Source: Haliotis rufescens
Taxonomy: Eukaryota
Assembly (NCBI RefSeq): GCF_023055435.1
Contig: NW_025963817.1
Span: forward strand, 1-64,000
Direction: 5' to 3'
Length of the DNA stretch: 64,000 nucleotides
A program made the position numbers and the translations under genes. Shown piece by piece: positions 30,766 to 62,931 of the stretch. A model generated the notes under the pieces. The model searched no databases, had not been told where the DNA came from, and saw nothing but the letters and a program-made list of their open reading frames with translations. Numbering within the stretch: position 1 is the stretch's first letter; every line of letters begins with the position of its first letter.

Positions 30766-31118
30766 GGTGAGGTGAAATGGGGTTTAACGTCGCGTCCAAG
30801 ATTATTGCGCTTATATAGCGACGTGCATGTACGTGTGTGTGTTTGTGTGGCTGCTTGTACTAGTCCGGACTGATGCCGATTTATAGTGCTAGCTCACTGA
30901 GATACCATGCCGCAGTTTAACATGAATACCCCACTCAGACACAGTATACTGACTCCGAGCCGACCAGTCCTTGTTTTAGCCCCTTAATGCCGAGCGCCAG
31001 ACAGGGTAACAACAAGTACCATCTTTTAACGTCTTTTGCTATGACGCGGCCCGGGATCGAACCCCGGACCTTCCGCTCTCCGGGCGGACGCTCTACCACT
31101 AGACCACGGAGACGGTCC
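30766..31118 (-). mobile_element. tRNA-derived SINE, family C (MetaSINE-like central domain)
   Basis: Minus-strand head GGTCTAGTGG...GGTTCGATCCC, central aaaagatggtacttgttgttaccctgtctggcgctcggcattaag, (ACCTC)n tail, TSD cattgggtaagtga at 30752-30765 and 31118-31131. The Meta-domain assignment is from recalled similarity only. Confidence 0.85.
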
Positions 31119-31818
31119 ATTGGGTAAGTGATCAAGATTATTAACATGATAAAACTGCATGGATCAGTTTGTACATGTAATTCAGAAATCTGTTTAAGGA
31201 ACATTGGATGGTGATAAGATCCAAAATTGTTACGGTGATCACGAAGGCGAGGCAAATTAATGAATTTAGTTAATAGGATGAAGGGTTGTGAAGATACTTG
31301 AAGTGGAACGTCCAGCACTGTTCTCAAGACCATCGTCTAACCATACCCTGACCAAAGACGTTACCCCGTCAGCAGGCTGACACCGTAGGAATGTCATCCA
31401 CACCATCGATAGCCACTGTCTTGTGATCTGCACCCGCAATGTGAAATATAATAAAACAAATATATTTATCAATTAGTCTATATTTGTTTAATTAATTTAT
31501 CTTAAAACTTACATGTTTTATCTACCTACATAACACTATCTCAAACATGTCTTACGAAGACAGATCGTGGAAATGTCTGGGCGTGTAGCAGTGGTCAAGG
31601 GGGGTAACTCTAACAATGTTAAAATAGCAGTTGTTGCTTCCGGGTTTCCCAACGCGGGATATGAAAACGACTTCAAAGGTCATGCGGTTTTCGCTGCATG
31701 ACAGTCGTTTGTAAATAAACACCTGTTACTTAACACAATCCAGGTTATACTGTCCTCAATACCGCAACTGAGACATATTGTGAACTGAGTTGACAAAGGC
31801 AGATGTGTTTGCAGGAGG

Positions 31819-34800
31819 ATGGGGCTTATCATATCGTTCTGTCAATTGTTCTTTGAAAAATTGTTCCAGAAAAGCGGATCAAGGTAGGTTGTAACACGGA
31901 TGTGACGATGTTTTTGTTATATTTTACACATCATTACATCGGGGCCAGTATTGTAGTAATTTTGAAATACACTCTGTAGTCGGGAGATATTGCTTGGACT
32001 AGATCAAGCGATATCTACACTGTAGATATCGCTGCAATGAAATTACATCACAATGCTTTGCAGACCATTGTGACGTCACCGGTTACCATGACGTCACAAT
32101 CAAATGACATCACTAATGGCTCTGCTACTGAAGCTGTTAGCAGTACTTTTTACACTGAAAACACTGCTAATTACTGTCTACTAATTGAAAAAGTTGGAAG
32201 AATGATGTTGGATGATATATAAAATCTCACTCAGAATTTTACCACTTTTATCAACTCGTGTTGATATATTTGATATCAAAAGACACTCGGGTGAGATTCT
32301 CTATTTAACAATAACATTTTTAATATTTTAGAATAAAGATCTATTAGAATCTTGCATGAATGCATTCTTCTATTTTTCACAATTTGAAATGTTGTTCCCT
32401 CCTAGCTGTAGTTTAGCTAGTCCAAAAGAAAACAAGAGAGACATAGCTATATATGTATATGTGGAATATATATTATCTCAAAAGTCATGAAAATATATAC
32501 AACTTTGAATTTGTCAGTCACACGTGAGATAAATATGTTATTAGTGAGGATCGACTACCCCCTACTATGAAAATCCTTCCTACGGTCTGCTTCATAAATG
32601 ACTGGCCTGGCCTCGATTAGTTCCACTACGATATTGCGGTAATATTGATCGAGACCTGTAGGTTACATTTATAATAATTTATTAGGCTAAAACAAATAAT
32701 AGTCTTGGTTCTCAGGCACCACACACATCATCATAAAGTTCACCGCATGTTACGTTTTTATTTCCATTTAAAAAAAAAAAATCCTTAAATAAGTCCAACG
32801 GTAGTTAAATACTGTATTCCAGTAATTTACTCATCAAGGAATATATTCATGAAGAGAGGCCCTTTCCCAGGTTGATTGTACACAATTGTTTATTGGTTAC
32901 ATACTAGTTTGAACACACACACACCCAAAAAAAAAGAAGAAAAAAAGACACCGCTCGCCCGCACTATATTTAAAAAAAAACATTGCCTGGGAACCAATTC
33001 TTTTATTTTTTTAAGGCTTATGTTTCATATTTTTTAACCTCAGGAACAAATTTGAAATTGAAGATGGCATCACCTTGTTTGACAATGAACACAGCCCTTG
33101 TGCAAGGAGAGTCCGTATTGCTCTCCATGAAAAGAAGATTCCATATAAGACGGTAAGACACTGTACTCCTGATGGTGTGGAGTGTTCATGTTATCAATCA
33201 CTGGTTTGTGAATCAAGTGCAGCCATAGCAATATGTTAGCTGGGTATTCTATGGTCTTGTATGTTTTGTTTGTTGTTTAATGCCGCACTCAGCTATATTC
33301 CAGCTATATGACGGCGGTCTGTAAATAATCGAGTCTGGACCAGACAATCCAGTGTTTGATATCATGAGCATCCCTTACACAATTGGGATACCATTACATG
33401 CATCAACCGAGTCAGCGAGCCTGACCACCCGATCCCATTAGTCGCCTCATTCGACAAGCATTGTAAGTCACCTTTTACGGCAAGCATCGATTGCTGAAGA
33501 CCTATTCTACCCTGGATCTTCACGGGTCTGGTCTTCTATTATATCACTGGGTCCTGCCGCCATCATTGATCTCAGCACCGACCGATCACTTCTTGCTTTC
33601 TTTCCTTAATATTAAGATGGCAAGTCATCAATGCTACATTTTTAAGCCCATTCGCTCGCTGTGTAGTTTATGTGTGTTTGTGTACATCAGGTTGAGGTGA
33701 ATCTGCTCACGGGAGAGAATCATCACCCAGACTTCGTGAAGATCAGTCCCAACAGAAAAATACCAGCCATTGCATTCAAGAACGTACAGGTGACACCATT
33801 AATCAGTTTTACTAACAATATCTGTATTGCATGTCATGTACAGAAGTTATGTGTTTGTAAATCAAACCTACTGGATTTCAGGTCAGATTATTAATCAGAA
33901 AAACTTCTGCTAGCTAGGTGAGTTCACTGGATTATGTGTGACATCATCCATTGTATAATGATGTCATCGCATTCCATGGTGATGTCATAGCTTTCCAGGT
34001 TAACATCCTAGCCTTCCAGAGTGACATCACGTCTGTCTCACAACTGCTGGAGATCATGTAGAGAAAGTGTCCTTCGGGATCCTACTGATAACTTTTGTAT
34101 TTTACAATGTCAAAAAGCAAAATGTTTTAGATTTTAGGGTGTATATATATATAAATATCAAAATTTCAGGGCATCAAATACAGTCAACTACGTTTAAAAC
34201 GAACTGACCGATATAACGAACTAATTTTTTCGTCCCGACCATTTGTTGAAATGCTGTATGTATGCTTATAACAAACTACAGTTATTACAAAGTAAAATTA
34301 GTGGTCCCCTCGAGTTTGTTATAACCGTAGATTACTGTAGTGAAAAACACCCTCAAATTTAAGTATAGGATGAAACACGTCCGAGGGTTGTTATGATATT
34401 TAAAACCCGCATCCCGAGGGATTTTTCGAGGGAATGGGTTTTAAATATCATAACAACCCGAGGGGAAGTGTTTTATCCTACTTATAAACAGATTTTGAAC
34501 CTTAAGACATTTATCAACATTTTTATGTTTCGAACATACTTTCCATGAACCTTAGGAAACGGGCATAAAATATCTGTTGCTGGCGTACGGATCTTGAAAA
34601 GGACATTCTAAAAAGCAGTGCGGCTTATCAACACCTCCGTAGCCTTGTGGTACACTCACTGGGCTACAGATATGAAAGTTGCGAGTTCGATCCTCGGGAA
34701 TATAAAGAAAACATTTGTCATTTGATTTTACATTTCATTACATGTTACAATCTGAACAGAAGTTATATTAATAAAATACCCAGGACATTATATAAAATCC

Positions 34801-37800
34801 CTGGGATATTATAACACATTATATAGCAAATATGACTTGAATATCCTATAAAATCCCGGGGATATTGTATTAAATCCCAGGGACATTACAACGTCCCTGT
34901 TTATGAGATTTAACCCGACTGGAGAACAATAGGATGACGTCACTGGAGTTTTATAAAAACACATTATGTTTATTTCCTACCTCTGACTCCTTACCGGTAT
35001 GTTTATTTCTTACCTCTGACTCCTGTTGTAAGGTATAGACTTGTGTTTTCGCAGGACGTCCCTGATTGTGTGATGTTCGAGTCCAGTGTGATCATCGAGT
35101 ACTTGGACACTGTGTGCCCAGGCAGCAGGCTGTACCCAGTTGACCCCTGGGAAAGGGCACAGGTCAAGATGTGGATGGATTGGGAGCTTGGTCTTGTTGA
35201 TGTAAGATTTGTTGTTTGTTTGTTTTTTATATGACGGCGTTCTGTAAATAATCGAGTCTGGACCAGACATTCCAGTGATTGACATCATGAGCATCGATCA
35301 AAGCAATTGGGATGCGATGACATGCATCAACCAAGTCAGCCAGCCTGACCACCAGATCCCGTTAGTCGCGTCTTAGGACAAGCATAGCCCCCCATTATGG
35401 CAAGCATGGGTTGATGAAGACCCATTCTACCCCGGATCTTCACGGGTCTGTCGATGTAAGAAACCTAATAAGGTGTGAGTGTTAAACACAAAATGATGCT
35501 CTCAAGCTGATGCTTTGTAGCCATGTTTGTCTACAGAATCTGCCACACATTTCAACCCCCTCTGTACATGTATTGGGAACATTTGACAACATAGTAAGCA
35601 GGTACGTACACATGCGTCATGTAGAGCTTGAAAGTAGTTCCTGTCAGGTGACCGACCTTCTTGCCTATTCTTTTTATCTTGATACCACGTTTTTCAGATT
35701 GGTATGTTGCATAAACAATATTATTACTTGCCATTATATGATAAATAATTTGTTTGTTTGTTGTTTAATGCCACACTCAGCAATATTACAGCTATATGAC
35801 GTCGGTCTGGACCAGACAATCCAGTGATTGACATCATGAGCATCAATCTATGTAATTGGGATTCGATGACATGCTTCAACCAATCCCATTAATCGCCTCT
35901 TACGAACGTTGTCACCTATTATCACAAGAATGGGTTGCTGATGACCTATTCTCTACCCGGATCTTCAGGGTTCGTGATAAATGAAACTAATTTGGGTTAT
36001 AATGTCCAAGACCTGGCTGTATCAAACTTCATTGATGCATCAACATGTCATTGAACCTCATTAACTAATGTATCATTAAATCAAGTTGTACTAACATTTT
36101 AATGACGTCGTTAACTTAATTAAGGTCCTGGGGTATCATTAGCATGTCATTAAAAACAAACAGGGCTGCGAACATATTCTTTGAATGCTTAGGACACACA
36201 AGGAAAGACTGTGTTTTCAGAAAACAAACTCAGCACCTCAAAACCTATCTTCCTGGGGCAAGGACTGTGAAAGTCCAGTTTCCACCCTGCCGAACTAGCT
36301 TGGAATATCTGGGTTCGGTTGTAGCGCCACTAGTGGTTATTACGAATTATGTCCCTTCTATGTCCCTAAGACGATCTGATCGATAATCAAGGTCTATGTT
36401 GTAATAAAACTGATCTGACTTCGCGAAGTGCATCAAATCACGTGAGCACCTTGATTAAAGATATGAAAAGATTTGGAAAATATCTGTTGACGCTAAATCC
36501 TGCAATCGACTGAAATCTACATGGCAGTTTACGAACAGGATGTTGATTTTGATACACACTTTTCATTGGACTATGCATAGCCTCATTAGTCCAGCCCAAA
36601 TATAACTCCAGCCTAGTTCGGCAAGGGTAGAAACTGGACTGGTCAGTTAACCCCCTTGCCTCGGGAAGATGCTCAAATCCATGAGCGATGAAGAAGTTAG
36701 TGCATGTTTCTGCTGTAGGAAGGCCATGTATTTAATGTATCATAAGGGTTTACTGTAGCTGTTAGTTAATGAAGCTTTGATACAGCCAGGTCCAAGTCTT
36801 TATACGTGAACCCTGTCTACTATGATGATGATGATGATGATGATGTGTTCTGCTGCAGGACCATGTACCTCTGGTGTATCAGAATACCCTCCCATTCATC
36901 CTGAGACTCAAACACCCATCAAAGGAGGCATACCTCAAGACTGTCCATCCTAACATGCCCAAGGCAAAAAGGGACATTTTTTGTAGGTACGTGAATGAAG
37001 GGAAGAGGACCAGCTTGAGTCTATATTCCACCAGGTGTACATATAATGGGGACAGCGTTAAGACCATAAAAGATATGTAGATAATATTAAGAAATCATGA
37101 CAGAAAAAAACATTTGAGAACAAATTAGCTTGATTGTTTGATGACAAATCCGCATTTATTGAAAAATCCCCCTGAAAACTTGGCACCCCCTTAACAGAAA
37201 CATGATAAATGTCAGTTATGCCCATCAATAGCGTGTGTGGCTTCCGTTAGCTGCTATACAGGCCACACATTAATGTCTCCTTGAGTTGCTAGTCTTTGGA
37301 AGAATGCCGTTCCATTCCCGAACCAAAAAGGCTTTCAGTTCCTGAAGTGTATGTGGCTGCCTTGCAGCCTGAAGACGTCTCCCAATCTCGTACAAGACAT
37401 GCTCCATTGGCGCCATGTCCGGTGACAAAGACGGCCAGGGTATCACAGGAATGTTATTCACCCTGAGGAAGTGCATGGAGACCTGTGCTGTATGGGGACA
37501 AGCGTTGTCCTGCTGAAAGACCTAGAGTTGAGGTTGACCCAGGAAGCGGTCTGACATGAATACGAAGAACATCATCCATGTACACGACAGTAGCCACACG
37601 CTAACGGAACACGTGTAGATCGCTCCTGTGATGATAACTGAAGCCTCCCCACACCACGATGCTTCCTCCTTCCCACCGGTTGGCCTGTAAGACACAGCAG
37701 TACCCTCATTAAGTAGTTTGCATGCACACTCTGATATGGCTATCGGAGTGAGAAAGACAACTTGCTGCCGCTGCTGAATGTCGCCAACACAGGTGCTGTT

Positions 37801-40800
37801 GGGCCACTGCAGACATTGTTGGCGTCGTTTAGTATGGGCCCAACATAGCACAACGATATCTGATTCCAGCCCCTCTTAGACGAAGACGAACTGTGTCGGC
37901 TTACATGTGGACCTTGAATGGTTGCACCTGTCTGTATTGCTCGTCACTGTCAGTCACACACGTAATAGTCCTGCACTGGAGTACTGACCCTCGGCGGCAC
38001 AGTACAAGGCTGGTGTTGGACACTGGCTTTCTGTGGATGCCTTGTGACCAATCTGGGGATGGTAGACACATGACACCCAAAGTGCCTCGCCACTGCAGTT
38101 GATGTTAATCCTGCCTGTAGCATCCAGACAGCAACGCCTCTTTGGAGTTCAGTTAATGGAACCTTGTTTCCTGAACCTTTTCAAAGTCAAGTGTGAAATG
38201 TTGGTGTTTTGTTTTTTTATATGGTGAAAAGGGGGAAAATGCACACATTTCTGCATGTGCTTTGTGCTGCATGAAATGACTGCGTTCCGGAGACATGCTC
38301 AAAGTGAATGATGTAAATAGTGAACAGTGTTTCTTCAATGCATCTCTTTATGTTTGGAGAGAGAGAGGGGGGGAGGGAGGGAGGGAGTTTTTCCTTTGGC
38401 GAGGTCTGGTTCTGGTTTTACAATAAGGGCTAGCATCTTTATATCCAAACACACAGTCTTTTTTTCTTTTAGCAGAGGATTCTCACTAGTACTTTGAGGG
38501 AAATCTGAAGCAAGACTAATAATGTAAATTACTTGCATGCATATATGATCCAGTATCTGGCACCTGGTAAGGCCCTGTTGTCCTGCCTGTTTCAGAGTGT
38601 ATGATGGGACCCACCGAACCCAGGAGGAGCTGGAGAAACATGCCCTCGCGTGCTACCAGAACCTGGTCGTCCTGGAGACGGGGCTGCAAGACAGACAGTA
38701 CCTGGTCAGAATCTCTCTCTCCATTTTACATAGTGGTTTCTCATTCAGTGCTGAGTAGAAGTATAATGTGCTTTGAGTAGTATCTTGCTTACTAGTTTTG
38801 TTTGGAATTAAGATTCTTAGTTTTGTCTGACATTTCTAAAGCAGGACAAATTCTTCTTTCGTTGGTCTTTAGTCTTGTCAATCTCATTCAAATCAGATCT
38901 TTGTTCTCGATACCGCTAAGCAGATCAGAGGAAATCCTATTACAGCTCATGTCACAATGACCTTTCAGGGACTTTGACCAACCAATTAAATGACCAACAA
39001 GAAGTGGACATTATCCAATCAGAAAGCAGCTTTTTGAGCTTTACAGCACTAGTTTCAAACTTCCCTGGGCAACGCTTTGAAAAATATTTGGACAAAGTTC
39101 TCAATTTAGAAGTGGACGACTGAACAAAATAACATTCTGTAATGTCTAATAGATGGCCAAGATTGTAAGGTAGTTCTCCTAGGGGCTGTTCCGTTTCAAA
39201 TGTTTATCCAACGGAAGCGAGATGCAGGGAACTATTTTGACAGAATCAGTCATACGGCTCACAACTGTTGTTTGAAATACCCCGTGTTAACCCTTTTGAG
39301 GTTGCCTGATTAGGAAATACATTCCAAATATCACATTCCTAATCAGGTAAGCGAGGCTCTGATTGGTCGGCTGAAAGGTCGTTGTGACTTGACCTGTAAT
39401 GGGATGTCTTCAGATCCTTGTTTAGCGGTAGCAAAAACTAAGATGAAACTAATAACTAAATTATTACACTTGTGTCGTACTGATTTTATTAAACTCGTGT
39501 AAGAGTTCTAGTATATCCCTCTGGAAATAGAAGAATTCTGACACTGATTTCGTAAAATCAGTATGACACATACTCGTATGATTTCTACAATCAGAGCTCC
39601 AGATAAGCTTTTGGTGTTGTGGGTATTTAACCCATGCATTTTAAAATCATTGGGTATCAGTAATTACCCACTAGTTTTTACACATGTGGGTATTTAAGTT
39701 AAATTTTTAAAAACACTATTCATCTAGTCCCTGCAAACTGGTGTTGTGTAGGTTCGAGAGCTTTATAGGACTCAAAAATAGCACGATACTTCCACAAGAA
39801 AGTGTGATGGCAAATGATCATGATGTAACTGTCATTGTGAAGTTTGGCAAGGTTGACGGAATGCCCGTTTATATTTTCAAAATAAGTTTCTGATTTGCTA
39901 ATCGAATACGCAGGATTTTATTTTACTGCGTATTTCTGCATTTCTGATGCGTATTTTACGCAGATACGCATCTTATCTGGAGCTCTGTACATACATATGT
40001 CCAGATTGATCAGTGTCAGCTCGATATGTTTAGGTTGGAGACAGATTCACAGTGGCCGATTTGACAGTTTTGCCCCGAGTTCGGATGTTCTTTGTCAGTG
40101 GGCTACCATTCACAGACAAGCACTTCCCCAATATTGTCCGATATTTAAAAAACTTGGAGGGTAGACTGTCCTTCAAGGCAAGTGAGAAAACCATGGTACG
40201 CTTTTCAAACACCATCATGACCAAAGCCCCATGGCTGCTCGTCGGACTGAGTAACTTCAAGTGTGGCACAAAACACAAGCGCTTTGATGGAAGTCCACAC
40301 ATAGACAGGTATGGATGTTGAAAGTTCTGAATCATAGTTAATAAGTTTCCTTTTTTATACAAAATTATTATCACTTTGTCATCTCACCTGACTGAAAAGA
40401 CAAGGGGGCTTCTGTCATGGACTGTTTGTCAGTCATTGCATCATTAGCAAGAGGTTAGAATCCAAAGTTCAATATGGCCGCCATGGAAGTCAATTCTGTT
40501 GGACAGTATCTGTACTTGTCAAGCTGTCACCGCAGTGGTTGTAGCCTCACAATAACTGGGGGATATTATCCCCTGCTACGAAGTGGAAGGGGATATAGTA
40601 ATTGGTGCTGTCCATCCTTCCTTCAGTCTGTCAAAAACCATGAGAGATATCTTAACCAAACTTGGCACATAGATAGGTCTAATGGTGATCTGGTGCCTTT
40701 TGATAGTTTTGGATTTTTGAAAATTTATTTTTTCGACTTTCCATGGCAACGACTTTGACTAAGACTGAAAATTGTGGTAGTGCTCCTTTCTTGAGCAGAT

Positions 40801-43800
40801 CTTGAAAAATGTACAAATTTCTTGCCTTGAACACAACCGGACATGTCATATTGGCGGGGGATATGAATATTTCATGCTTGGTTAGACCTGCCATAAGGTC
40901 GATATTTGGCCACAAAAATACAACAAATGTCATTAAAAAATTCCTACATTTGTATTGAAAAATTTCAATTTTTTGTTATAATAATTATGATAGTTGCAAC
41001 TATTGTTATGGCTTTGCAGAAGTGGCATGTGTTTCATTGATAACTGGACCAAGAGAGAGGAGAAGGATTTTCATCATGCATTGAATTCATTGCTAAAATG
41101 AATTGTTGCAGTGACTCTGAATTTAAGAAAATATGACTTTAGAAAAATCCAAATTATGAACAAAACATTGATTTATTCAGAATTTGCCTGCAACAGGCAC
41201 TTTGTTTGTAGGCCTATACGAACCCCCTACAATAGTGTGTTTACCTATCTCAATACCATTGCAATCGTTGTTGTTTGGTCTCAGGGCTATAGGAGAGACA
41301 GAGGCAAGCACCAAGTCCCTGATCGAGGCAAGCACCAAGTCCCTGATCCAGGCAAGCACCAAGTCCCTGGTCCAGGCCAAGCTACCCTACGTCCACAAAG
41401 ATGACATCACCGTCTACAACTACCCCACCTCCACCGAGGTGTGGCAGGTGAAAATACTCCTCAGTGAAAAGGTAAAATGTCCACTCTTCTTGTGTACATG
41501 TTCCTGTTCTCCAAGTATCAGCACATGTATCAGGTCATGATACGATTCATACGATACACATATTTCATTCAATCACGGGGAAATGTCTTGGCTATAAAGA
41601 TTTCAGTGCTCCTTTCCAGAGCAGATCTTGAAAACTGTATAATATTTCTTCACCAAACTTGGCACATACATAGGTCTATTGGTAAACTGGTGCCTTTTAA
41701 TAGTTTGTCATTTCGGAGAATTTCTTTTTGAGTTTCCATAGCAACAACTGTGACTTAGACTGAAAATGGCGGTAGTGCTTGTTTCTGGAGCAGATCTTGA
41801 AAAACGTAATATATTTCTTGCTTTGCACACAACCAGACATGTCATATTGGTGGGGGATGTGAGTATTTCATGCTTGTTAAAAAAAATTTATTTGAGGTTT
41901 GGGGACATTTGCACAGATCACCTGTCATTCTGATCCATTGTTGGTCATGAATATTGATTGATGGGTCCTCACTATGATTCCTATTGTTTCCATGGAAGGG
42001 TGTGTCCTACAAGAGTGTTGACTGTCCCTTCATCGATCTGATTGGCCGAGCAGCTGGGTCAGGATCAGTGATGAGGATACAACATGGCGGCCGTATGGTG
42101 ACAGGTCCCAGGACCGTCCTGGAGTATCTGGACAAGGCTTTTAGTGGCAAAAGTAGGTATCTCAGTTTGTTGTGAAAGTACACTTGGAGTAAGTAAGGTT
42201 TTTCCTAAACTGAAAGATTTAACAGATATATTACTAAGTTATGGTAATTTGAAATTTAATAAAAAAAATTGTTAATTTTAATATATTTGTTTCATTTGGC
42301 ATTCGTCATGAGTTGATGTGATAAGCGGCCAAAGAAATGAAGCATTATATATCTATTTTGTTCAATCAGAGGTTAGTTCCCTTCATAAGGGTTTTGTAGT
42401 GGTCAGAGACTATATGAAATGTATATAATTATTTTCTGTTAGATGTTTGTAGATGCATCTTTTCATCAAATCTCATTAAAATCCAATCTTTGTTCACGCT
42501 ATCGCTGAACAAAGATCTGAGGACATCCCATTATGGGTCCCGTCAGAACGACCTTTAATGCGACAAATCAGAGCATTGCTTACCAGATTGGGAAAATGAC
42601 AGTCAGAATGTGTTTTCTAATCATGCAAGCTCAAAAAGGGTTAACACAGGGTATTCCGAACAAAAGTTATGGGCTGTAAGACTGATTCCATCATCGATTC
42701 GTCATCATATGATTCGTCATCTATCGTACGCTTTGATAGGATAAAGGTTTGAAACATAAGAGACTTGCCATAGACTATGGGAGTAATGCCACACAATCTT
42801 GGCCATCTGTTAGATATTCAAGAATGATCTTTAGTTCAGTTTTAAAATTTTGAATCACTAAGTTTTCAATATTTGGTATACTTTCTAATGTGTAAGTCGT
42901 GGCTAACGACTTTCACTTGGTTGACATACAATGAGGATTTGCAGATTTTATTGTTTTCAGTAGCTAGTCGTATATTGAATCTTGAATGACCGCCATTTTG
43001 CTTTCTGTGACGATCGATATCAAATTTTTTTATGGTCAATAAATAAGTACAGATGAAAATAGTATTCAAATAACTATTGCTATCAACGATATTTTAGTAT
43101 TTGTGATTATATTATCTGTCTTGTTTTTAAATAATCTTTAGTTTAAAAAAATCTTTTCCCGTGAGGTCACGTGATAACCAAATATGGGATAATAGTCTCG
43201 ATCCAAATGTTACAACGCGTACACTTGAGCAGACTCATGAATATAACTCATAAATATTAATTAGACCGTTCGTTACGTTAACAGATCGTTATTATAACAG
43301 AAACAAACGTATGTTTTCCATGTATATCTAAAATGATATTTTTTTTTATTAATTGTCCGGTGAATTAAACAATTTAAATTGAAACAATTCATAATTCATC
43401 ATATTATGAATACGTAACAACTTGTAATGTGTGTGAAAAGTCGTACTAAAATACGCTTTTTGAAGGGGGCGTGGCCTAAATGCAAATGTCCGATTGGGAT
43501 TTTAAATTTTCCGGACCCCTGCTTTCTATAGTGTTGGTGGATGGGGGTGTAGCAATATTGTAAGATGCAATCTTTTCTTCTTCCTTACCACGTTGTTATG
43601 GTTACAGAACTGTTGCCGGACAATCCAGAACAGAGGTCACAAGTGCAGTGTTGGCAGGCTTGGGAACAAACCATGTACTTCAATGAGTTAGCTCCCCTTG
43701 TTGAAATGTGCATTGTCTCTAAGGTTATGGTACTCAGGTAATTTATCTATGAAACGTACTGGAAATAATTTATTGTCTATATTTGAGGGCGGTGTGGTAG

Positions 43801-45091
43801 CCTAGTGGTTAAAGCGTTTTCTCGTCACGCCGAAGACCCGGGTTCGATTCCCCAAATGGGTACAATGTGTAAAGCCCATTTTCTGGTGTCCCCCTCCGTG
43901 ATATTGCTGAAATATTGCTCAAAGTCAGCGTAAAACCACTCACTCACTCACTCACTCACTCACTCACTTGCTCACTCACTCACTCACTCACTCACTCACT
44001 CACTCTATTTGAAATATTAATCTTTTTACCCAAAATTGTAAACAAATTTACTCAAACCCTTTTGTGATGGGAGTCAAAGTGTGGAGGAGTAAGTTTTCTG
44101 TCGCTGTGAACGGTATTTCAGGGGATGTCAACTTGATGTAGAATAACCATTAAATGATGGTGGTCATAGAGGTCTTTTAACTTTTGGTGGATGTTAGTTG
44201 TCCAAATATCAAGAATAATAATCAGGGTGAATTTCAGATTTGAAATCACAATCACAGGATCTTTAATGCCAAAGGGAAGCAACTCTGCACAGCGAAGTCA
44301 AAGTTAAAGGATTAGTTTGATAACACAGGGAACTTTAGGGACGGGAGGAGCATCATTCAAAGACAAATAACTTGTTCTAGATGACACAATCCGATTATAT
44401 CTTGTTTTTTTTGTGAACATATTTTACACATTTATGTTTTATGAATGACAATTAGACTTATAGTAACCTATGATAAGTTCACTTAAAGCAAAGTTAGGAA
44501 TTATGCTAAAAAATGGATGCATATTATCAGTTTTCATTGCGAACAATTGATGTTATTCTATGTGAACTGGAAACACTGCAAGCTGTTGTAGCGAGCTTAG
44601 GATGTAAGGAATAATGTCTAACATTTAAGATGCAAGAATGCTACTATCTTTGTGATGACTAAGCCTCAAAATATATGCAAGTTATGGTGCGATACGACAG
44701 GTACGAGGAGCACCTGGACGAGCTGCTGTCACTGAGAGGTAACCCCACGTACCACGCCAAGTTCAACAGCATCCTCAGGTGTTTCATGATGGGGTAAGTC
44801 CTGCCCCAGCATCACAAGTACATGGGTCGCACTCTGTCAGTCACAGTGGGACTTCAGTATCATCTTGAAATCTCCATCAAAGTCTGCTGACCATCTCCGT
44901 GGTCTAGTGTGTCTTGCCTGGAGAGTTTGGCATAGAACAGGCACACACAGACACAGAGACAGGCATACACTCACACACACATGCACACATACACACACAT
45001 ACACACATATATATATACACGCACACACAGACATACACACACAGAGACACAAAGGCGCGCACACACACATAGAGACACATACACAGGCATG

Positions 45092-45122
<31 letters not shown>

Positions 45123-47470
45123 TCACGTACACACAGACATACATACACACAGAGACACATACACAGGCATGCACGCACACATACAGACACACACACAGAC
45201 ACTCACGTACACACAGAGACACATACACAGGCACGCGCACACATACAGACACACACAGAGAAACATACACAGGGGGCGGTCGGGTAGCCTAGTAGTTAAA
45301 GCGTTCGCTCGTCATGCCGAAGACCCGGGTTCGAATCCCGACATGGGTACAATGTGTGAAGCCCATTTCTGGTGTCCCCCGCCGTGATATTGCTGGAATA
45401 TTGCTAAAAGCGGCGTAAAACCAAACTCACTCACTCACTCACTCACATACACAGGCATAGAAACACAGACACATACAGACACAGACAGAGACACTCATGC
45501 ACACACAGACACATACACAGGCACGCACACACACACACATACAGACACACACAAACAGAGACACTCACGCACACACAAACATACACACACAGAGACACAT
45601 ACACTTGCACACACACNNNNNNNNNNNNNNNNNNNNNNNNNNNNNNNNNNNNNNNNNNNNNNNNNNNNNNNNNNNNNNNNNNNNNNNNNNNNNNNNNNNN
45701 NNNNNNNNNNNNNNNNNNNNNNNNNNNNNNNNNNNNNNNNNNNNNNNNNNATATCATTTATAACAGGCTTGTGATTTGTTTAAACAACATATCAGGCAGC
45801 GATTTTTCATACAGATGAGGTCACGATTGTGAAAGTAGATCCAGGGCGAACTCAGATTGGTTGTTTCATGCTCACGACTGAGAGAAATTTGTGTGCTAAG
45901 ATTGAGCTGCTGAAACTGGTGGCAAACTGGGCCAGGATTTTTATCAGAATAGAATGGAGATATAATAAAATGGATCATCAAGGATAGCTGAATTTTACTA
46001 ATTTCCATTTGTTTGATAACGAGGGCATTTATAAATTAGGTAATAAAATTACAAATGTTACCTTAAAGCTTTTGATTTTCCTGCCCAATTTGTTTTGTTT
46101 TTCTTCTACTGAACAATGCCAGACCCATACATTTTTGTGTTTTACAGACAAAACTACCTAAATTTAGGTAAAGTAAACAACAATACTTGGAAATAGAAAT
46201 AAAAACCCAAAATATACTTTTTTGTAAATGTTGAAAATATTCTTGTTTTCATTTTTGCTACAACTCATTTAGGAAATTTGTGGGAAATTTGCCTCAACAT
46301 TTTTTAGATTACGAGAGGACAGTCCCTGTTGGCCCCAGCTGACGAGAGACTATGGACATTTGATGGACACTAATATGGACAGGAGGAAGAAGAAGGAACT
46401 AACATTTGAGTTACTTCACATCCGTCTCCAGCATCTCGAGGCATCGCTACAGGTGGGTGGCAGGGAGTGTCACATGTGTTTATTGTGTGGTACGTTTTCT
46501 GGTTTGGTTTGGTTTGGTTTGGTTTGTTGTTTAACCCCGCACTCAGCAATACTCCAGCTATATGTGGCAATCTGTGAATAATCGAGTCTGGACCAGACAA
46601 TCAAGATATTGATATCATGAGCATCGATCCGATCATCGGTCCCAATTGCTTGGATTGATGCTCATGATGTCAATCACTGGATTGTCTGGTCCAGACTCGA
46701 TTATTTACAGACCGTTGTCATATAGCTGGAATATTGCTAAGTGCGGTGTTAAACAACAAACAAACAAACAAACCTGTGTGTGGGGTCACATTTCAAATTT
46801 TTCATTCATTTCAATGAGGTAAGGAGGTCATATTTTAAATTACCGTATTCGACGTAATAAGCGCCCCACTCAAATAAGTGCCCACGGCGACATTTGCTGA
46901 TATACTGGCTAGTGAACAATCCCAATTAGCAGCCCTTCCAATTGATCAATATACACAAGACTTATTTATTCATGTTTATTACCCACCAGTGTGTTATATG
47001 CACCCTTAATTATGGGCAATTAAATTCTGGAAAATATATCTGTCGCGTGTAATACACAGAGACTTTTCTCTTGTATCATTACAAGCTGTCAGCATAAACC
47101 ACGAAATTTACAATCTTTCAACTCTGGGTTTTTTTCACCAAAATTGTATTCTAATAAGAGCCCCCTATTTCTAATTTTGAGAGTGCCCTGGGCGCTTATT
47201 ACGTCGAATACAGTATGTTTATTTGGCAGGTTTAATGATCTACCACTGGTGACCTATAGTAATGTATTCCAGGACAAGACCTACCTGGTTGGAGAGAACC
47301 TGTCTCTGGCAGACATCTGCGTGTTCTCTCGCCTGGCCCTGTTTGCCCACGTGGGGATGAAGATCTCGGCAGACAGGTACCCCTCTGTTGCCACCTGGCT
47401 GGTCCGGCTGCAGACCAGGCAGCCATTCTCTGACTGTATCGACTTCCTCAACAAAATCTTCCATATATAG
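31819..47470 (+). CDS. Tandem two-module glutathione S-transferase-like protein, 612 aa, 13 coding exons
   Basis: Exons 31819-31883, 33044-33152, 33691-33789, 35055-35201, 36859-36986, 38596-38704, 40034-40308, 41285-41471, 41999-42152, 43608-43737, 44701-44793, 46308-46452, 47273-47470. All introns are GT-AG and phase-consistent (1839 nt). Module 1: [49 protein letters not shown]. Module 2: [43 protein letters not shown]. Confidence 0.9.
32683..33020. mobile_element. MITE (aggct...ggttctcaggca termini); inverted copy at 47845-48184
   Basis: The two copies are reverse complements over about 330 bp, with imperfect TIRs. Confidence 0.75.
33265..33528 (-). mobile_element. SINE family A (GST intron 2)
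   Basis: Matches the family-A consensus over its full length. Confidence 0.88.
35208..35448 (-). mobile_element. SINE family A (GST intron 4) with a 13-bp TSD overlapping the splice donor
   Basis: TSD tgt(t/c)gatgtaaga at 35195-35207 and 35449-35461. Confidence 0.88.
36246..36671. mobile_element. MITE family E (GST intron 4)
   Basis: TIRs present; TSD ctcaaa(a/t)cc. Confidence 0.82.
37090..38260 (-). mobile_element. Decayed Tc1 (DD34E) transposon in intron 5 of the GST gene
   Basis: Minus-strand remnant [42 protein letters not shown] has 34 residues between D and E. The frame is broken upstream. Boundaries are approximate. Confidence 0.85.
39592..39987. mobile_element. hAT-like MITE with 16-bp perfect TIR CAGAGCTCCAGATAAG
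   Basis: TIRs at 39592-39607 and 39972-39987; TSD not preserved. Confidence 0.7.
40565..40900. mobile_element. Helentron/HINE-like repeat (related units at 41560-41878 and possibly 1-150)
   Basis: Terminal stem tatcccct...ggggata followed by aaacttggcaca units; 1-30 carries gaccttgacc...caaggtca. Family assignment is inference. Confidence 0.55.
43786..44005 (+). mobile_element. tRNA-derived SINE, family B (GST intron 10)
   Basis: A and B boxes, long (ACTC)n tail, short TSD tatttga. Confidence 0.88.
44940..45616. repeat. (CA)n-rich compound microsatellite interrupted by a SINE
   Basis: acacacag/acatacac repeats running into the gap at 45617. Confidence 0.9.
45272..45445 (+). mobile_element. 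tRNA-derived SINE, family B, inserted in the CA-rich repeat
   Basis: Near-identical to the other family-B copies. Confidence 0.88.
46500..46772. mobile_element. Two inverted partial family-A SINEs (fold-back)
   Basis: 3' halves in opposite orientation with the tails pointing outward. Confidence 0.85.
46843..47213. mobile_element. Tc1/mariner-type (TA TSD) MITE, CCGTATT termini; inverted copy at 49693-50035
   Basis: TA-ccgtattcgacgtaataagcgccc...gggcgcttattacgtcgaatacag-TA. Confidence 0.85.
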
Positions 47471-48518
47471 AGAAATGTAGATGACTGACTGATGTTCACC
47501 TTGTCCATGACACAGTCTTTACATGGAATGGCTTGTCAGGGTTTGCATATCTTTCAGTCATAATCACCATTATTATTCACAGAACCATTTTTCAAATTAT
47601 TTACATAGTCTATCATCACTTTACACATTCCTTTCTACCATGACATTTTAAAATCCTGTATTCTGATTGGTCCGGCAGGAGTAGCAAATCCGCTTCAGAC
47701 CATAATTTTGCTGATGGCCACAAAAGAATATTAAAGAAAATATTTATTTAAAAATTATTTTTTTTAAAAACAGTTTTCAATTTCACGATCTGATTGTACT
47801 TAATAAATGCTGCAAAATACAATATTGTGGGTTGTGGAGTATTTAAGGCTTAAAAAATTAAAAGAATTGGTTCTCAGGCAATGGTTTTTGAAAATATAGT
47901 GCGGGGGTGTCTTTTTCTTTTTTTTGTTCAAACTAGTATGTTACTAATAAACAGTTGTGTAATCAATAACCAATTGTGTACAATCAACCCGGGAAAGGGC
48001 CTCCCTACATAAATGTATTCCTTGATGAGTAAAATACCGGAATACAGTATTTGACTACCATTGGACTTGGAATATTTAAGGATTTTGGTGGTTTTTTTTT
48101 AAAAATGGAAATAAAAACGTACGGTGAACTTTATGATGAAGCGGGCGGTGCCTGAGAACCAAGAATATTATTTTTTGAAGCCTAATACAAGTGTGGCAAT
48201 ACATTTTACACATAAAGCCTGATGAAAAATGATTTGGTTAGTATATTGCAAAATATTAATAATAAGATAAGATTGTGTCATCAGTTCTCTTTTGAAAGAG
48301 TATGTGTTTATTTTCTCACTTTGTTTTTGTTTTTAATGTAGGGGTTTCAGACCTATAAGCTGGCACTTTCGTATTCATATGAAATGTGTGGTAATCAAAT
48401 CAACATTGAAAACCTCTAAATTTAAAACACAGTAGCTTTATCTCCTAATAATATATTTTAGTCAGTTAAGCATTGTGTTATCTTGATTTAGTATTTTGTT
48501 TTAGATTTGTTTCTTCTG

Positions 48519-48549
<31 letters not shown>

Positions 48550-48698
48550 AACCTGGTCCAAGTGATCCAAAACAGCATTTCCTGATTTTACACGATCAGC
48601 TTTTGTTTTGTGCCAAGTATGTAAACATCACCAGATACCAAAGGAAAATGTGCATATGATAAACTTTATACATAAGTTCGCTGTGACCTAATATTGTC

Positions 48699-48862
48699 GG
48701 GGCGGTCGGGTAGCCTAGTGGTTAAAGCGTTCGCTTGTCACGCCGAAGACCCGGGTTCGATTCCCAACATGGGTACAATGTGTGAAGCCCATTTCTGGTG
48801 ACCCCCGCCGTGATATTGCTGGAATATTGCTAAAAGCAACGTAAAACCATACTCACTCACTC
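48699..48862 (+). mobile_element. tRNA-derived SINE, family B, full length
   Basis: A box TAGCCTAGTGG, B box GGTTCGATTCC, (ACTC)n tail, flanked by TSD cctaat(a/g)ttgtc. Confidence 0.9.
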
Positions 48863-57352: not shown

Positions 57353-60127
57353 TTAGCCAATCCTGGGGATGCTTGCGACTGTCCCATCTACCTGAACGAA
57401 GATCCTAACTCTACTCCGACAGAAGTTCTCCGTGACAAATGAGTCCGCCGGTAGTACAAATACCTGACAACACAATAAAACTATAATATCAAGACACACC
57501 CCAGCAATCCCATTTTTGGCTAATAACCATAGACGTCAACATTTTATAGAGTATCCTCAAAAAGGAAAAAAAGACACTATTTTTTAAAACTTTTTTCAAC
57601 CTTAAACAAATTTACCGGCCTAGTAGTTTCATACCCAAAAAACACAAATTACAGGATTAACTTTTTGATTTCTTGCATAAAATAGATTCATATTGTTCAC
57701 ATTTATCCAGAGTTCTATTTCCATAATAAATATACAATGGTTGACATTCCTTGCATTATGACGTCATTTAGGCGTCTGTAAATAAGTCGAGTCTCGACCA
57801 GACAATTAAGTGATTGATATCATGAGCATCGATCTACGTAACTGGGACAAGATGACATGCATCTACCAAGTCAGAGAGTCTGACCACCCGATCCCGTAAG
57901 TCGCCTCTTACGACAAGCATAGTCGCCTATTACGGCAAGCATGGGTTGCTGAAGGCCTATTCTACCCGGATCTTCAGGGGTTGGTGTCCATGTAATACAT
58001 TGTGACCACCCAGTGTTAGTGAACTCTCACACGACATAAAGATGTGTCCATCAGTTTCAGATATGCAGTCTGAGATGAAGCTACATATGTACTTATAGCG
58101 AGTTCTAAAAGGTAAATATTTGCAGGTTGAAAGTGATTTGATGTGTGACACCAGACAAACAGACTTCACACATTTCATTCTTATAGGGAATCAAACACCC
58201 GGGCCCTCATCCTAACTAGCAAACAGCTTTACCATTAACTACCCCGCCACCCCGCTAAAGTAAGGGGGTGAGGTAAGGTAAAATGGGTCTTAACGTTACT
58301 TCCAAGATTATTGCACTTGTACATGCACGCTTGTACTAGTCCGGACTGATGCCGATTTATAGTGCTAGCCCACTGAGATACCATGCCGCAGTTTAACAGA
58401 GTTCAGACAGAGTTGACTCTGAGCCGACCAGTTCTTGTTTTAATCCTTTAACTGCCGAGCGCCAGGCAGGGTAACAACAAGAACTATATTTTAACGCATT
58501 TTGGCATGACTCGGCCGGGGATCGAACCCCAGACCTTCCGCTCTCCGGGCGGACGCTCTACCCCTAGGCAACGTAGGCGGTCCATCTAAAGTAAGACATT
58601 CGTGACAAATGTATATCTGAAGAATAGATGATGTCATTGCATTTTAGGAATGGGGTGAGTTCAGTTTGCAAACCACACAAGAATACGTGTACCTCTAGGT
58701 CGGGGTTGTCTTGTCGTATGGCATCCCTTGCATCAACGCCAAGCTAAAAAAACAAATAGATTACCTTAGAATATCCACAGACTAACATTGTTCATTAAAC
58801 ACAGCGAATGAAGCCAAGAAGAAAACCCAAGGTTCGGAGGATACAGACAATCCGTGACTCCGTGTAGCTCGTTGGTTATCATCTTCCCGAGGCAAGGGAG
58901 TTAACTGACTATGAAAATCCAGTTTCCACCCTTGCCGGGATTTTCTGGGCTCGATCGTAGCGCCACCAGTGGCTATTACGAATTATGTCCCTTCTTTGTC
59001 CCTCCTATTGACCACTATTCCACCTACGAGCGTATAGTCACGCGGGACGCGTTCGTTTGTGCATCTAACCAATCTAAAATATCTCTTGAACATGAGTCAT
59101 TCTTCAAAAAAGATTATAGTAACCAACATGTATGGTATTCGCGTTTCTTTTGTCCGTGAGTATATAACCAACATTAAAAATAAACAATAAACACTCCACA
59201 AATCGTAAACAGGTTTTATCTTTCAGGTTTCATTTCAAAAGGTATGCATCTATGTACTTCCTTCGCTTAAAGTGGGCGCTGTGGTTCACGGTCACTAGTT
59301 CTTTTCCAGCCAAGGCCAGGGCGTTGTTTTTTTAATCCACTGCGTGAAACCGAGTGAGTGAGTTGGGTTTTAACGCCACTTTTAACACAATTCCAGTCAT
59401 ATCGCTGCGTGTCAGCTTAATGTGGGAGGAAAGCCCGAAGTAATGCAGGTCTCAGACGTTCACTAATTCGGTGAAACCCACAAGCACGGGTATGGTGCTG
59501 ACAAACCTAGAAACATAATCGGGGCGAACCGGGATTCGAACCCACAACCATAGGTTTCGCGTGAAACTGAGAGATAATATCCATGACTTATGGAATCAGT
59601 AACTGATGATTGACGTTCATCCCAAAGCGCGAGGTAACAAAACGGTGTTTAAGCTACCTGGGTTCAATTGGTCCCAGCGTTAATAGTGTCCTTTTAAGAT
59701 GTTCAGATGTGATCCTTTGTTACAGGACTCAATTATCCTGATGTGCTGTAGTTTTGCATCAGAGGGTAACTGGCTTCAACGTGAAAACAAACTGACAGAC
59801 GGTATGGCCCCTTGCATGCACACGAGACGCCATATTCTCAATTATTTCAGATGTTATTTTAATGTCAGCTATACATTATTCGCGTGACAATACTGTGCCC
59901 TGACCTCGATACTTACATTTCCCGCTGGACTTGTATAAAGGCCATTGTAGCATGTAGCTAACTGCCAGTCAGCTATAGTACATGTATATGCTGGAGATTA
60001 ATATCACATAAAAGCATGTGAACTCTCCCAAAGAAGGTATCCTTATGATGCTTCCTCTCACCTTATGAAGAAGCTCTGGCCATTCATCCTTGGTTGGTGC
60101 TGCTGCAGGTTCGCGGTGTTCATCCAT
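57353..60127 (-). CDS. Potato inhibitor I family (I13) serine protease inhibitor, copy B, 75 aa
   Basis: Exons 60127-60062, 58743-58693 and 57463-57353 (same 66/51/111-nt sizes as copy A) give MDEHREPAAAPTKDEWPELLHK-LGVDARDAIRQDNPDLE-VFVLPADSFVTENFCRSRVRIFVQVDGTVASIPRIG*. Minus-strand AATAAA near 57007-57018. Confidence 0.92.
58265..58585 (-). mobile_element. SINE family C, second copy (intron 2 of inhibitor B)
   Basis: Homologous to 30766-31118; TSD ctaaagtaag. Confidence 0.85.
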
Positions 60128-62367: not shown

Positions 62368-62931
62368 CTGTATCAGTCTTCCAGCCCAACAGCTTCTATC
62401 CCAAATCAACAGCACCTAAACTAAAATCCTAATGGCAGTATGTGTGAGCTACTTATTTAATATTATTAATGATTCTCTTGTAGGGTTTGTTTGTTTGTTT
62501 GTTGATTAACTCTGCACTCAGCAATTTTCCAGCTATATGACGGTGGTCAGTTAATAATCGAGTCTGGACTAGACAATACAGTGATTGATGTCATGAGCAT
62601 CAATCCACTCAATTGGGATACAATGACATGCATCAACCAAGTCATCAAGCCTGACCACCCGATCCCGCTAGTCACGGGTTTCTCCTGTAGGAATAAGTGT
62701 GGCATCAGTTCTAGCACATCAGTGTGGATGTGACCAAGAAGGTTTGTTCATCCATGTTAAGGTTGACTGAGTGAGTTGCTTTCAATGCTGCCTTCAGCAA
62801 TATTCCAGCAATATCACAGCAGGGGACACTAGAAATTAGTTTCACATTTTGTACTCATGGGAACTGAACCACTTTCCTCTTGACAAGTGAATACTTCAAC
62901 CACTAGGGTACACCATTACCACTCTATGTTT

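What the first reader, a model, noticed from the sequence alone, without database searches (positions are those of the whole stretch)
31819..47470. Single-chain tandem GST (GST-GST fusion) with one apparently active and one degenerate module
Seen: 13 phase-consistent exons encode two full GST N+C modules. Module 1 has SPCARRV, the cis-Pro loop (KIP) and the ES glutathione-binding motif. Module 2 has STEVWQV, no cis-Pro (GSGSVMR) and GP in place of ES, but keeps EYLD and the YLVGxxxSxAD N-cap. Known: cytosolic GSTs are usually single-module (~200-250 aa) dimers. Both modules have a long insert in the helical domain, as in GDAP1/TCHQD-type GSTs. Inference: a covalent pseudo-heterodimer with a catalytic half and a structural or ligand-binding half, which could be an uncharacterised animal GST class.
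Basis: partly seen in the sequence, partly recalled or inferred. Interest (0 to 1): 0.8.

Follow-up and report, generated by a model that had tools for sequence, protein, structure and literature searches.

The report
Conserved single-chain tandem GST gene
This is a real, expressed 13-exon abalone gene whose single 612-residue protein carries two glutathione-transferase units, the first intact and the second with a degenerate active site; its family is conserved from bacteria to marine invertebrates, is predicted in databases, and I found no study of it.

Summary
Window 31819-47470 (+) holds 13 GT-AG exons. Walked codon by codon, they match RefSeq XP_046331277.2 ('uncharacterized protein LOC124114648 isoform X1', Haliotis rufescens, 612 aa) with no mismatch.

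- **Assembly gap:** 45617-45750 lies inside intron 11, and orthologues align without a break across that exon junction.
- **One transcript:** spliced contigs from three independent public runs join the last exon of module 1 to the first exons of module 2, in frame. It is one gene, not two.
- **Family:** about 600-aa tandem GSTs occur in molluscs, hemichordates and amphioxus. An unnamed group has an N-terminal membrane helix. Bacteria also have them, including a Shewanella isolate. All module 1s separate from all module 2s in a tree, so the fusion is one old internal duplication, not an animal invention.
- **Asymmetry:** module 1 keeps an invariant glutathione site (S39, cis-P83, E100-S101). 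Module 2 is canonical in bacteria. In animals it shares a 6-residue deletion, an IGRxxGSGG loop, no cis-Pro and no ES.
- **Structure:** AlphaFold gives pLDDT 89 and pTM 0.89, with both modules full GST folds (Z about 23).
- **Membrane anchor:** gastropods and hemichordates start MGxxxS, the myristoylation consensus.

The GDAP1 link is not supported, and the pseudo-dimer geometry could not be tested. The closest precedent is kinetoplastid TDR1. Interest is moderate.

The parts
31819..31883 (+). Exon 1: ATG and residues 1-21 (MGLIISF..., N-myristoylation consensus MGxxxS); ends in phase 2
33044..33152 (+). Exon 2: module 1 strand 1 and helix 1 with [11 protein letters not shown] (S39 invariant, C41 kept in at least 90% of sequences)
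   Evidence: Pfam GST_N_2 3e-6
33691..33789 (+). Exon 3: module 1 helix 2 and strand 3 with the cis-Pro (P83, invariant)
35055..35201 (+). Exon 4: module 1 strand 4, helix 3 (E100-S101, EYLD) and start of helix 4
36859..36986 (+). Exon 5: module 1 helical insert between helices 4 and 5; weak polypyrimidine tract, located through orthologue tblastn
38596..38704 (+). Exon 6: module 1 helix 5, ends ...RQYL
   Evidence: (end at 38704 in X5 and X6; about 110 nt covered)
40034..40308 (+). Exon 7: module 1 N-cap box [10 protein letters not shown], helices 6-8 and the structured part of the inter-module linker (conserved ...SNFKxGxxxKRFDG)
   Evidence: Pfam GST_C 2.4e-5; contig joints; single copy in the genome
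41285..41471 (+). Exon 8: flexible linker with a 24-nt x 3.3 repeat, then module 2 strand 1 and helix 1 ([10 protein letters not shown] in place of SPCARRV)
41302..41382 (+). In-frame 24-nt tandem repeat (EASTKSLI x3) in the linker. One unit in RefSeq isoform X3, in H. cracherodii and in H. rubra, and in the contig of run X6
41999..42152 (+). Exon 9: module 2 strand 2, shortened helix-2 region with IGRAAGSGS, strands 3-4 without cis-Pro, GP in place of ES, EYLD
43608..43737 (+). Exon 10: module 2 helix 4
44701..44793 (+). Exon 11: module 2 helical insert (donor GGG|gtaagt at 44793)
45617..45750 (.). Assembly gap (N), inside intron 11, flanked by CA-rich arrays; no effect on the coding sequence
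46308..46452 (+). Exon 12: module 2 insert and helix 5
47273..47470 (+). Exon 13: module 2 N-cap box [12 protein letters not shown], helices 6-8, stop at 47468-47470
   Evidence: Pfam GST_C 1.4e-7
48473..48565 (+). Region of the alternative last exon of RefSeq isoform X2 (donor 47376; poly-Ile tail from a simple repeat); doubtful

Best explanation
This is LOC124114648 of the red abalone. It is one 13-exon gene giving one mRNA and one 612-residue protein built of two paralogous GST modules (residues about 28-270 and 350-612). The modules are joined by a partly helical, partly flexible linker. The fusion arose once by internal duplication of a bacterial-type, zeta/LigF-like GST that carries an extra helical insert. 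It is shared by bacteria, an unnamed group with an N-terminal membrane helix, and bilaterian animals. In animals the protein is probably tethered to a membrane by its N-terminus: myristoylated MGxxxS in gastropods and hemichordates, a membrane helix in scallop. Module 1 is the working half. It keeps every glutathione-site element (Ser39-Pro-Cys41, Arg43-Arg44, cis-Pro83, Glu100-Ser101), so it most likely binds glutathione and carries out Ser/Cys-type chemistry of the zeta kind (isomerisation, thiol transfer or dehalogenation rather than bulk conjugation). Module 2 keeps the whole GST fold but has lost the canonical glutathione site in the animal clade. It has gained a conserved glycine-rich loop (IGRxxGSGG). 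It most likely serves as the built-in partner subunit that a GST normally gets from dimerisation, possibly with a new ligand or regulatory role. Shown: the gene structure, the transcript, the family, the duplication and the motif asymmetry. Inferred: membrane anchoring, catalysis by module 1, loss of glutathione binding by module 2 and the pseudo-dimer packing.
For: Transcript: Logan contigs of runs X1 (1426 nt) and X6 (1441 nt) join 40033-40305|41282-41468|41996-42152|43608-43740. They run 653 nt further 3' and 715 nt further 5' respectively. X5 joins exons 6-7-8. The three runs come from three studies. Introns are skipped at GT-AG borders, so these are spliced RNA. The junction exon 7 to exon 8 is in frame. 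Identity to XP_046331277.2: 0 mismatches. Family: a search with exon 7 alone found 550-663-aa proteins with two matched stretches, named. There are 72 homologues with E<=1e-10, including Haliotis, Littorina, hemichordates, amphioxus and bacterial MAGs, and bacterial genomes including Shewanella surugensis DSM 17177. Duplication: profile comparison of module 1 against module 2 gives probability 100, E 1.8e-63, collinear through the insert. All 41 module 2s separate from all 41 module 1s, support 0.989. Asymmetry: S39, R43, R44, P83 and E100 are invariant, and P40, C41 and S101 are kept in at least 90% of sequences. Module 2 is canonical in bacteria (SPHARRIR, NPNGELP, YDS) and shares the derived state in all 14 animal sequences. 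Constraint on module 2: mean pairwise identity across 8 animal lineages is 38% (N domain) and 35% (C domain), against 26% for the linker. Fold: pLDDT 89.4, pTM 0.89. Module 1 matches LigF at Z 22.9, and module 2 matches FzlA and GSTs at Z 22.6-22.8. The best curated HMM is maleylacetoacetate isomerase, 111.8 bits. N-termini are listed. Animals form one clade (99), sister to the membrane-helix group.
Against: No biochemical data exist for any member. Cys41 is not universal: it is Ala in H. rubra and H. asinina and Pro in Patella, so a Cys-dependent mechanism cannot be general. The maiA score is below its cutoff (111.8 against 171), so the chemistry is not assigned. The mutual arrangement of the modules could not be inspected. 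The only solved single-chain tandem GST (TDR1) superposes badly as a whole (TM 0.27/0.36, rmsd 24 A). The runs are labelled only 'RNA? (a guess)'. Expression depth is low (2.5-23), and one contig (X8, 41373-41592) reads through the exon 8 donor. Myristoylation is inferred from a short consensus only, and amphioxus lacks it.
Confidence: 0.66

Rival explanations
1. These are two neighbouring, tandemly duplicated GST genes that the reader (and the RefSeq pipeline) joined by mistake.
For: Read without splicing, exon 7 runs into a stop at 40319. Module 2 has no in-frame ATG of its own in exon 8. That absence argues against this rival rather than for it.
Against: Spliced contigs in three runs cross the exon 7 - 8 - 9 junctions in frame. 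About 600-aa collinear orthologues occur in three animal phyla and in intron-less bacterial genes.
Confidence: 0.02
2. Both modules are catalytically active, and module 2 of animals binds glutathione or another thiol through a non-canonical site built around the IGRxxGSGG loop.
For: Module 2 is conserved across phyla and keeps H402, Y416 and the N-cap box. In bacterial relatives both modules look active. The TDR1 precedent has two GST domains per subunit.
Against: The catalytic Ser/Cys, the Arg pair, the cis-Pro and the Glu-Ser pair are all replaced, and helix 2 is shortened by 6 residues. The loop has lower model confidence (block 391-400 averages 68).
Confidence: 0.12
3. The whole animal protein is a non-enzymatic, membrane-bound GST-fold scaffold or regulator, in the manner of GDAP1, CLIC, SspA or FzlA. 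The conservation of module 1 then reflects glutathione sensing or ligand binding, not catalysis.
For: Membrane-anchor signals sit at the N-terminus. FzlA and SspA models and structures score high. Cys41 is lost in some species.
Against: Every canonical glutathione-site residue of module 1 is invariant or nearly so from bacteria to animals. That pattern is the usual signature of an active GST. In three related gammaproteobacterial MAGs the tandem gene sits beside catabolic enzymes (VOC-type dioxygenase, FAA-family hydrolase, FAD monooxygenase).
Confidence: 0.2

Closest known systems
TDR1 of Leishmania (PDB 4AGS) and Tc52 of Trypanosoma cruzi: single-chain two-GST-module proteins
   Same: Two complete GST modules (N plus C domains, twice) in one polypeptide. 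[quoted passage not shown] TDR1 is the top Foldseek hit, aligned over 611 columns in the same domain order. That Tc52 has two GST-like domains is my own knowledge and was not checked here.
   Different: Only 13% identity. The global superposition fails (TM 0.27/0.36, rmsd 24 A), so the modules are arranged differently or only one superposes. The present family has a SPCARRVR (zeta-like) motif and an insert between helices 4 and 5. It has an N-terminal lipid or membrane-helix anchor in eukaryotes, a degenerate second module in animals, and bacterial members. It is an independent fusion.
Zeta-class GST / maleylacetoacetate isomerase (TIGR01262; PDB 1FW1, 2CZ2, 8E8P)
   Same: It is the best curated HMM for module 1 (3.3e-32) and among the best sequence matches to solved structures (5e-14). 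[11 protein letters not shown] resembles the zeta SSCxWRVRIAL motif (the motif itself is from my own knowledge). Module 1 aligns with the zeta fold.
   Different: The score of 111.8 bits is below the family cutoff of 171. Zeta GSTs are single-module homodimers of about 210 aa without the insert.
LigF beta-etherase (PDB 4XT0) and bacterial 260-284-aa single-module GSTs
   Same: LigF is the best structural match of module 1 (Z 22.9, rmsd 2.9 A, 235 of 243 residues), so the extra helical segment is matched too. Atlas clusters of bacterial GSTs of 260-284 aa cover residues 30-311 (TM 0.81-0.83).
   Different: These are single modules. The beta-etherase HMM scores only 31.5 bits against a cutoff of 440.
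GDAP1
   Same: It is a GST-fold protein with an insert between helices 4 and 5, and it is membrane-bound.
   Different: It has one module and a C-terminal tail anchor, whereas here the anchor is N-terminal. It is not among the best 60 sequence matches or the best 50 fold matches. No specific homology was shown.

Membership tests
Soluble GST superfamily | Thioredoxin-like N-terminal domain | tested here: met
   Module 1: GST_N, GST_N_2 and GST_N_3 on exons 2-3 and on P0108. Module 2: a second GST_N_3 stretch, and full-fold matches at Z 22.6-22.8 over residues 350-612.
Soluble GST superfamily | All-helical C-terminal domain with the N-cap box | tested here: met
   GST_C is found twice. A560 and D561 are invariant, and YLVGxxxxxAD is present in both modules.
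Soluble GST superfamily | Glutathione-site residues (catalytic Ser/Cys, cis-Pro, Glu-Ser) | tested here: met
   Met for module 1: S39, P83 and E100 are invariant, C41 and S101 kept in at least 90%. Not met for module 2 of animals.
Soluble GST superfamily | Glutathione binding and catalysis | not testable with these tools
   This needs recombinant protein.
Zeta class / maleylacetoacetate isomerase | Score above the TIGR01262 equivalog cutoff | tested here: not met
   111.8 bits against 171.05 for P0108, and 152.4 bits for the bacterial P0053.
TDR1/Tc52-type tandem GST | Two complete GST modules in one chain | tested here: met
TDR1/Tc52-type tandem GST | Common descent or the same mutual arrangement of the modules | tested here: not met
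   13% identity, TM 0.27/0.36, rmsd 24 A. The nearest single modules are zeta, LigF and epsilon GSTs rather than specifically omega.
TDR1/Tc52-type tandem GST | Trimeric quaternary structure | not testable with these tools
   Only a monomer was modelled.
GDAP1 family | C-terminal transmembrane tail anchor | tested here: not met
   The C-terminus ...[15 protein letters not shown] is a soluble helix. Anchor signals are at the N-terminus.
GDAP1 family | Specific sequence or fold similarity above other GST classes | tested here: not met
   GDAP1 is absent from the best 60 and the best 50 lists.
N-myristoylated proteins | Met-Gly start with a small residue at position 6 (MGxxx[STAGCN], not followed by Pro) | tested here: met
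   MGLIISF here. MG[LIV]xxS in 5 other gastropods, and MGSLFSK or MGARSSK in 3 hemichordate proteins. The modification itself was not tested.

The most novel reading that the evidence does not exclude
Bilaterian animals inherited (or took from bacteria) a tandem GST and turned its second module into a pseudo-enzyme. The new, phylum-spanning glycine-rich loop (IGRxxGSGG) would bind a ligand other than glutathione, for example a phosphate-bearing or lipid molecule. The N-terminal myristate would place this sensor-plus-enzyme pair on a membrane. This would be a new animal GST class with built-in regulation, and I found no description of it in the literature.
Probability: 0.25. Interest if true: 0.65.

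Novelty: new variant of a known kind. Interest (0 to 1): 0.45.

Why it matters
GSTs are textbook homodimers, and natural single-chain two-module GSTs have so far been described only for kinetoplastid TDR1/Tc52. This second, independent fusion spans bacteria to chordate relatives. It gives a natural series running from 'both halves canonical' (bacteria), through an intermediate group, to 'one half degenerate' (animals). That series makes it a clean system for asking what the partner subunit of a GST contributes, and how a pseudo-enzyme domain evolves inside an enzyme. For abalone and other mollusc genomics, it names and delimits a gene that is currently 'uncharacterized' and that domain-count surveys of GSTs would miscount. 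It is absent from the vertebrate, arthropod and nematode entries returned by my searches. Its role is therefore likely tied to marine invertebrate physiology, but that is speculation.

Tried and rejected
- **Early exon guesses.** I first took exon 7 to end at 40195, exon 8 to start near 41382 and exon 11 to end at 44778. The contigs and orthologues showed 40308, 41285 and 44793 instead.
- **Exon 5.** A script scan for exon 5 with strict splice-site thresholds missed it because of its weak polypyrimidine tract. tblastn with orthologues found it.
- **Two-gene hypothesis.** Rejected.
- **Kinship with GDAP1/TCHQD.** No support.
- **Paralogue in the same genome.** Exon 7 matches only itself. Only the best candidates are scored, so this is a lower bound.
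- **Literature.** Searches for tandem or two-domain GSTs, and for the locus tags and accessions of family members, found nothing on this family. The primary TDR1 papers are not held.
- The origin of the unnamed membrane-helix group (contigs up to 2.2 Mb) therefore stays unknown.
- **Pseudo-dimer geometry.** No coordinates are exposed, so this was not tested.
- **Bacterial gene neighbourhoods.** They gave only a weak hint. A TetR regulator, a VOC-type dioxygenase-like protein, an FAA-family hydrolase, an FAD monooxygenase and an SDR sit next to the tandem gene in three related gammaproteobacterial MAGs. The context in another MAG (L002) is unrelated.
- **Joined sequence.** My model was searched exon by exon. 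Full-length analyses used the public protein returned by the tools.

Full report
**Check of the observation.**
Splice-site inspection and the start region gave a first exon model. Pfam on single exon products recognised GST_N in exons 2 and 3. It recognised GST_C in the exon starting at 40034 (2.4e-5) and in the last exon (1.4e-7). I left out the step of joining the exons. All full-length work below uses public proteins that the tools returned.

**Transcript evidence.**
Public runs holding about a fifth of the words of 40000-42200, which is the exon share, were found in several studies. Their Logan contigs were laid on 38560-44540.
- X1 record 1 (1426 nt) consists of 40033-40305 | 41282-41468 | 41996-42152 | 43608-43740 and continues 653 nt further 3'.
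- X6 record 15 (1441 nt) has the same joints and continues 715 nt further 5'.
- X5 record 7 links exons 6, 7 and 8.
- The three-letter ambiguities at each joint resolve to canonical GT-AG borders: 40308/41285, 41471/41999, 42152/43608.

The contigs skip introns, so they are spliced RNA although the runs are labelled 'RNA?'. The last exon of module 1 is therefore spliced in frame to the first exon of module 2, and the two-gene alternative is refuted. One low-depth contig in X8 (41373-41592) reads through the exon 8 donor. It is unspliced precursor or DNA.

**Final gene model and identity.**
A search of 1.8 billion representative proteins with exon 7 alone returned 24 hits. Most were 550-663 aa with two matched stretches, the best at about residues 220-310. 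They are named proteins of Lottia, Patella, Batillaria, Mizuhopecten, Solemya, Nucella and Branchiostoma, all 'hypothetical' or 'uncharacterized'.

tblastn of these proteins on the window is collinear over all exons. It revealed exon 5 (36859-36986) and the correct exon 11 donor (44793). A second search brought in Haliotis proteins.

The window's exons, walked codon by codon, match P0108 = XP_046331277.2 with 0 mismatches over 612 residues. That entry is 'uncharacterized protein LOC124114648 isoform X1 [Haliotis rufescens]'. All twelve introns are GT-AG. The window is therefore red abalone, and the gene model is already in RefSeq.

**The assembly gap.**
The gap at 45617-45750 lies in intron 11 (44794-46307) between CA-rich arrays. 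Proteins from other assemblies (H. rubra, Lottia) pass from exon 11 to exon 12 without missing residues. Nothing was filled in.

**Family and origin.**
Homologues with E<=1e-10 number 72. They include:
- gastropods, a scallop, three hemichordate genera and amphioxus, where one entry is auto-named 'GSTZ1';
- an unnamed group from ENA/Logan assemblies with an N-terminal hydrophobic helix, on contigs up to 2.2 Mb;
- many 565-600-aa proteins of bacterial MAGs.

A scan of one genome per bacterial species found full-length tandem genes in several MAGs, in Halioglobus and in the isolate Shewanella surugensis DSM 17177. It also found about 230-aa single-module relatives in many Alphaproteobacteria. 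The nearest large Atlas clusters are bacterial single-module GSTs of 260-284 aa covering residues 30-311.

The two modules are paralogues over their whole length, including the extra helices. The profile comparison gives probability 100, E 1.8e-63 and 26% identity. The halves are 26% identical in abalone and 39% in a bacterial member. In a tree of 82 separated modules, all module 2s split from all module 1s (support 0.989). There was thus one duplication, before bacteria and animals diverged in this family.

In the full-length tree the 14 animal sequences form one group (99). Within it, amphioxus and hemichordates group together (97). The animal group is sister to the membrane-helix group (99) (quick tree, midpoint root).

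By eye, intron positions in the two modules do not coincide. This fits intron gain after the duplication.

**Asymmetry of the two halves.**
Across 41 sequences, module 1 has S39, R43, R44, K52, P83 and E100 invariant. P40, C41, V45, R46 and S101 are kept in at least 90%. Exceptions at Cys41 are H. rubra and H. asinina (Ala) and Patella (Pro).

Module 2 differs by group:
- **Bacterial and environmental group:** canonical (SPHARRIR, NPNGELP with the cis-Pro, YDS).
- **Membrane-helix group:** keeps the cis-Pro.
- **All animals:** share a 6-residue deletion in the helix-2 region, the loop IGRxxGSGG, no cis-Pro, and Gly-x in place of Glu-Ser. The SPxxRR motif is replaced (T-S-T-E-V-W in abalone).

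Module 2 is nevertheless constrained. Mean identity among eight animal lineages is 38% (N domain) and 35% (C domain), against 26% for the linker. Module 1 stands at 56% and 43%.

**Structure.**
AlphaFold2 on the 41-sequence alignment gives pLDDT 89.4 and pTM 0.89. Only residues 1-5, 18-20 and 331-347 are disordered. The last of these is the stretch just after the repeat in the linker.
- Each module has three or four extra helices between helices 4 and 5.
- Residues 272-335 form ordered helices.
- Foldseek's top hit is TDR1 (4AGS) over 611 columns, but with TM 0.27/0.36 and rmsd 24 A.
- The second-look aligner matches module 1 best to LigF (Z 22.9, 235 of 243 residues). It matches module 2 to FzlA and ordinary GSTs (Z 22.6-22.8).
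- By sequence, the best solved relatives are an unclassified bacterial GST (4MK3), zeta GSTs and YfcG.
- The best curated model is maleylacetoacetate isomerase, below its cutoff.
- GDAP1 does not appear in these lists.

**N-terminus and linker.**
Gastropod proteins start MG[LIV]xxS, and three hemichordate proteins start MGSLFSK or MGARSSK. This is the N-myristoylation consensus. Scallop and the unnamed group have a hydrophobic helix instead, and bacteria have neither.

The linker carries a 24-nt x 3.3 in-frame repeat. One unit is seen in isoform X3, in H. cracherodii and H. rubra, and in the X6 contig. This is a length polymorphism in a disordered stretch.

**Bacterial context, a weak hint only.**
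In three related gammaproteobacterial MAGs the tandem gene lies next to a TetR regulator, a VOC-type dioxygenase-like protein, an FAA-family hydrolase, an FAD aromatic monooxygenase and an SDR. GSTs in such clusters usually act as isomerases or dehalogenases (my own knowledge). Another MAG shows an unrelated context.

**Comparison with what is known.**
The review PMC4138524 describes TDR1 as a unique trimer whose subunits each contain two GST domains. This is the only described precedent I could document. The present family is an independent fusion of a different GST type. No paper on it was found.

**Verdict.**
- The gene model is already public, the architecture is old and also bacterial, the GDAP1 analogy is only topological, and the pseudo-dimer packing is still untested.

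Noticed in passing
window 37270-38123 (- strand): Remnant of a Tc1/mariner-type transposase reading frame (…[26 protein letters not shown]…) inside intron 5. It is a single copy in the window.
   Followed up: partly
window 43780-43940; also 45274-45423, 48700-48849, 8033-8174, 6344-6481, 62793-63054: A short interspersed element of about 150 nt, with 7 copies in the window at 72-90% identity. RNA-run contigs pile up on it to summed depths of 2.3e5-5e5, so it is a very abundant transcribed repeat of abalone genomes. Two copies sit in introns of this gene, one just before the assembly gap.
   Followed up: partly
window 30980-31170 and 58445-58585: A second, tRNA-like short repeat (translates as …GSIPGRVI…) just upstream of the gene, with another copy at 58.4 kb (87% identity).
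   Followed up: partly
window 44942-45271 and 45432-45616: Long imperfect CA-rich arrays on both sides of the N gap in intron 11. They are the likely reason for the assembly break.
   Followed up: yes
window 47376 to about 48473-48565: RefSeq isoform X2 (601 aa) leaves exon 13 at a donor at 47376. It ends in a poly-isoleucine tail read from an (ATT/ATC)n simple repeat, which would cut off the last helices of module 2. It looks like a minor or artefactual isoform.
   Followed up: partly
L005, L006, L008 (gammaproteobacterial MAGs): The bacterial tandem-GST genes are flanked by a TetR regulator, a VOC/glyoxalase-type 375-aa protein, an FAA-family hydrolase, an FAD aromatic monooxygenase and an SDR. 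This is a possible aromatic or hydroquinone catabolic cluster.
   Followed up: partly
P0013, P0048-P0050, P0116-P0127 (unnamed ENA/Logan proteins): A separate clade of about 600-aa tandem GSTs with an N-terminal hydrophobic helix and a half-degenerate module 2 (cis-Pro kept). They lie on contigs up to 2.2 Mb, so the hosts are probably eukaryotes, but the organisms could not be identified.
   Followed up: partly
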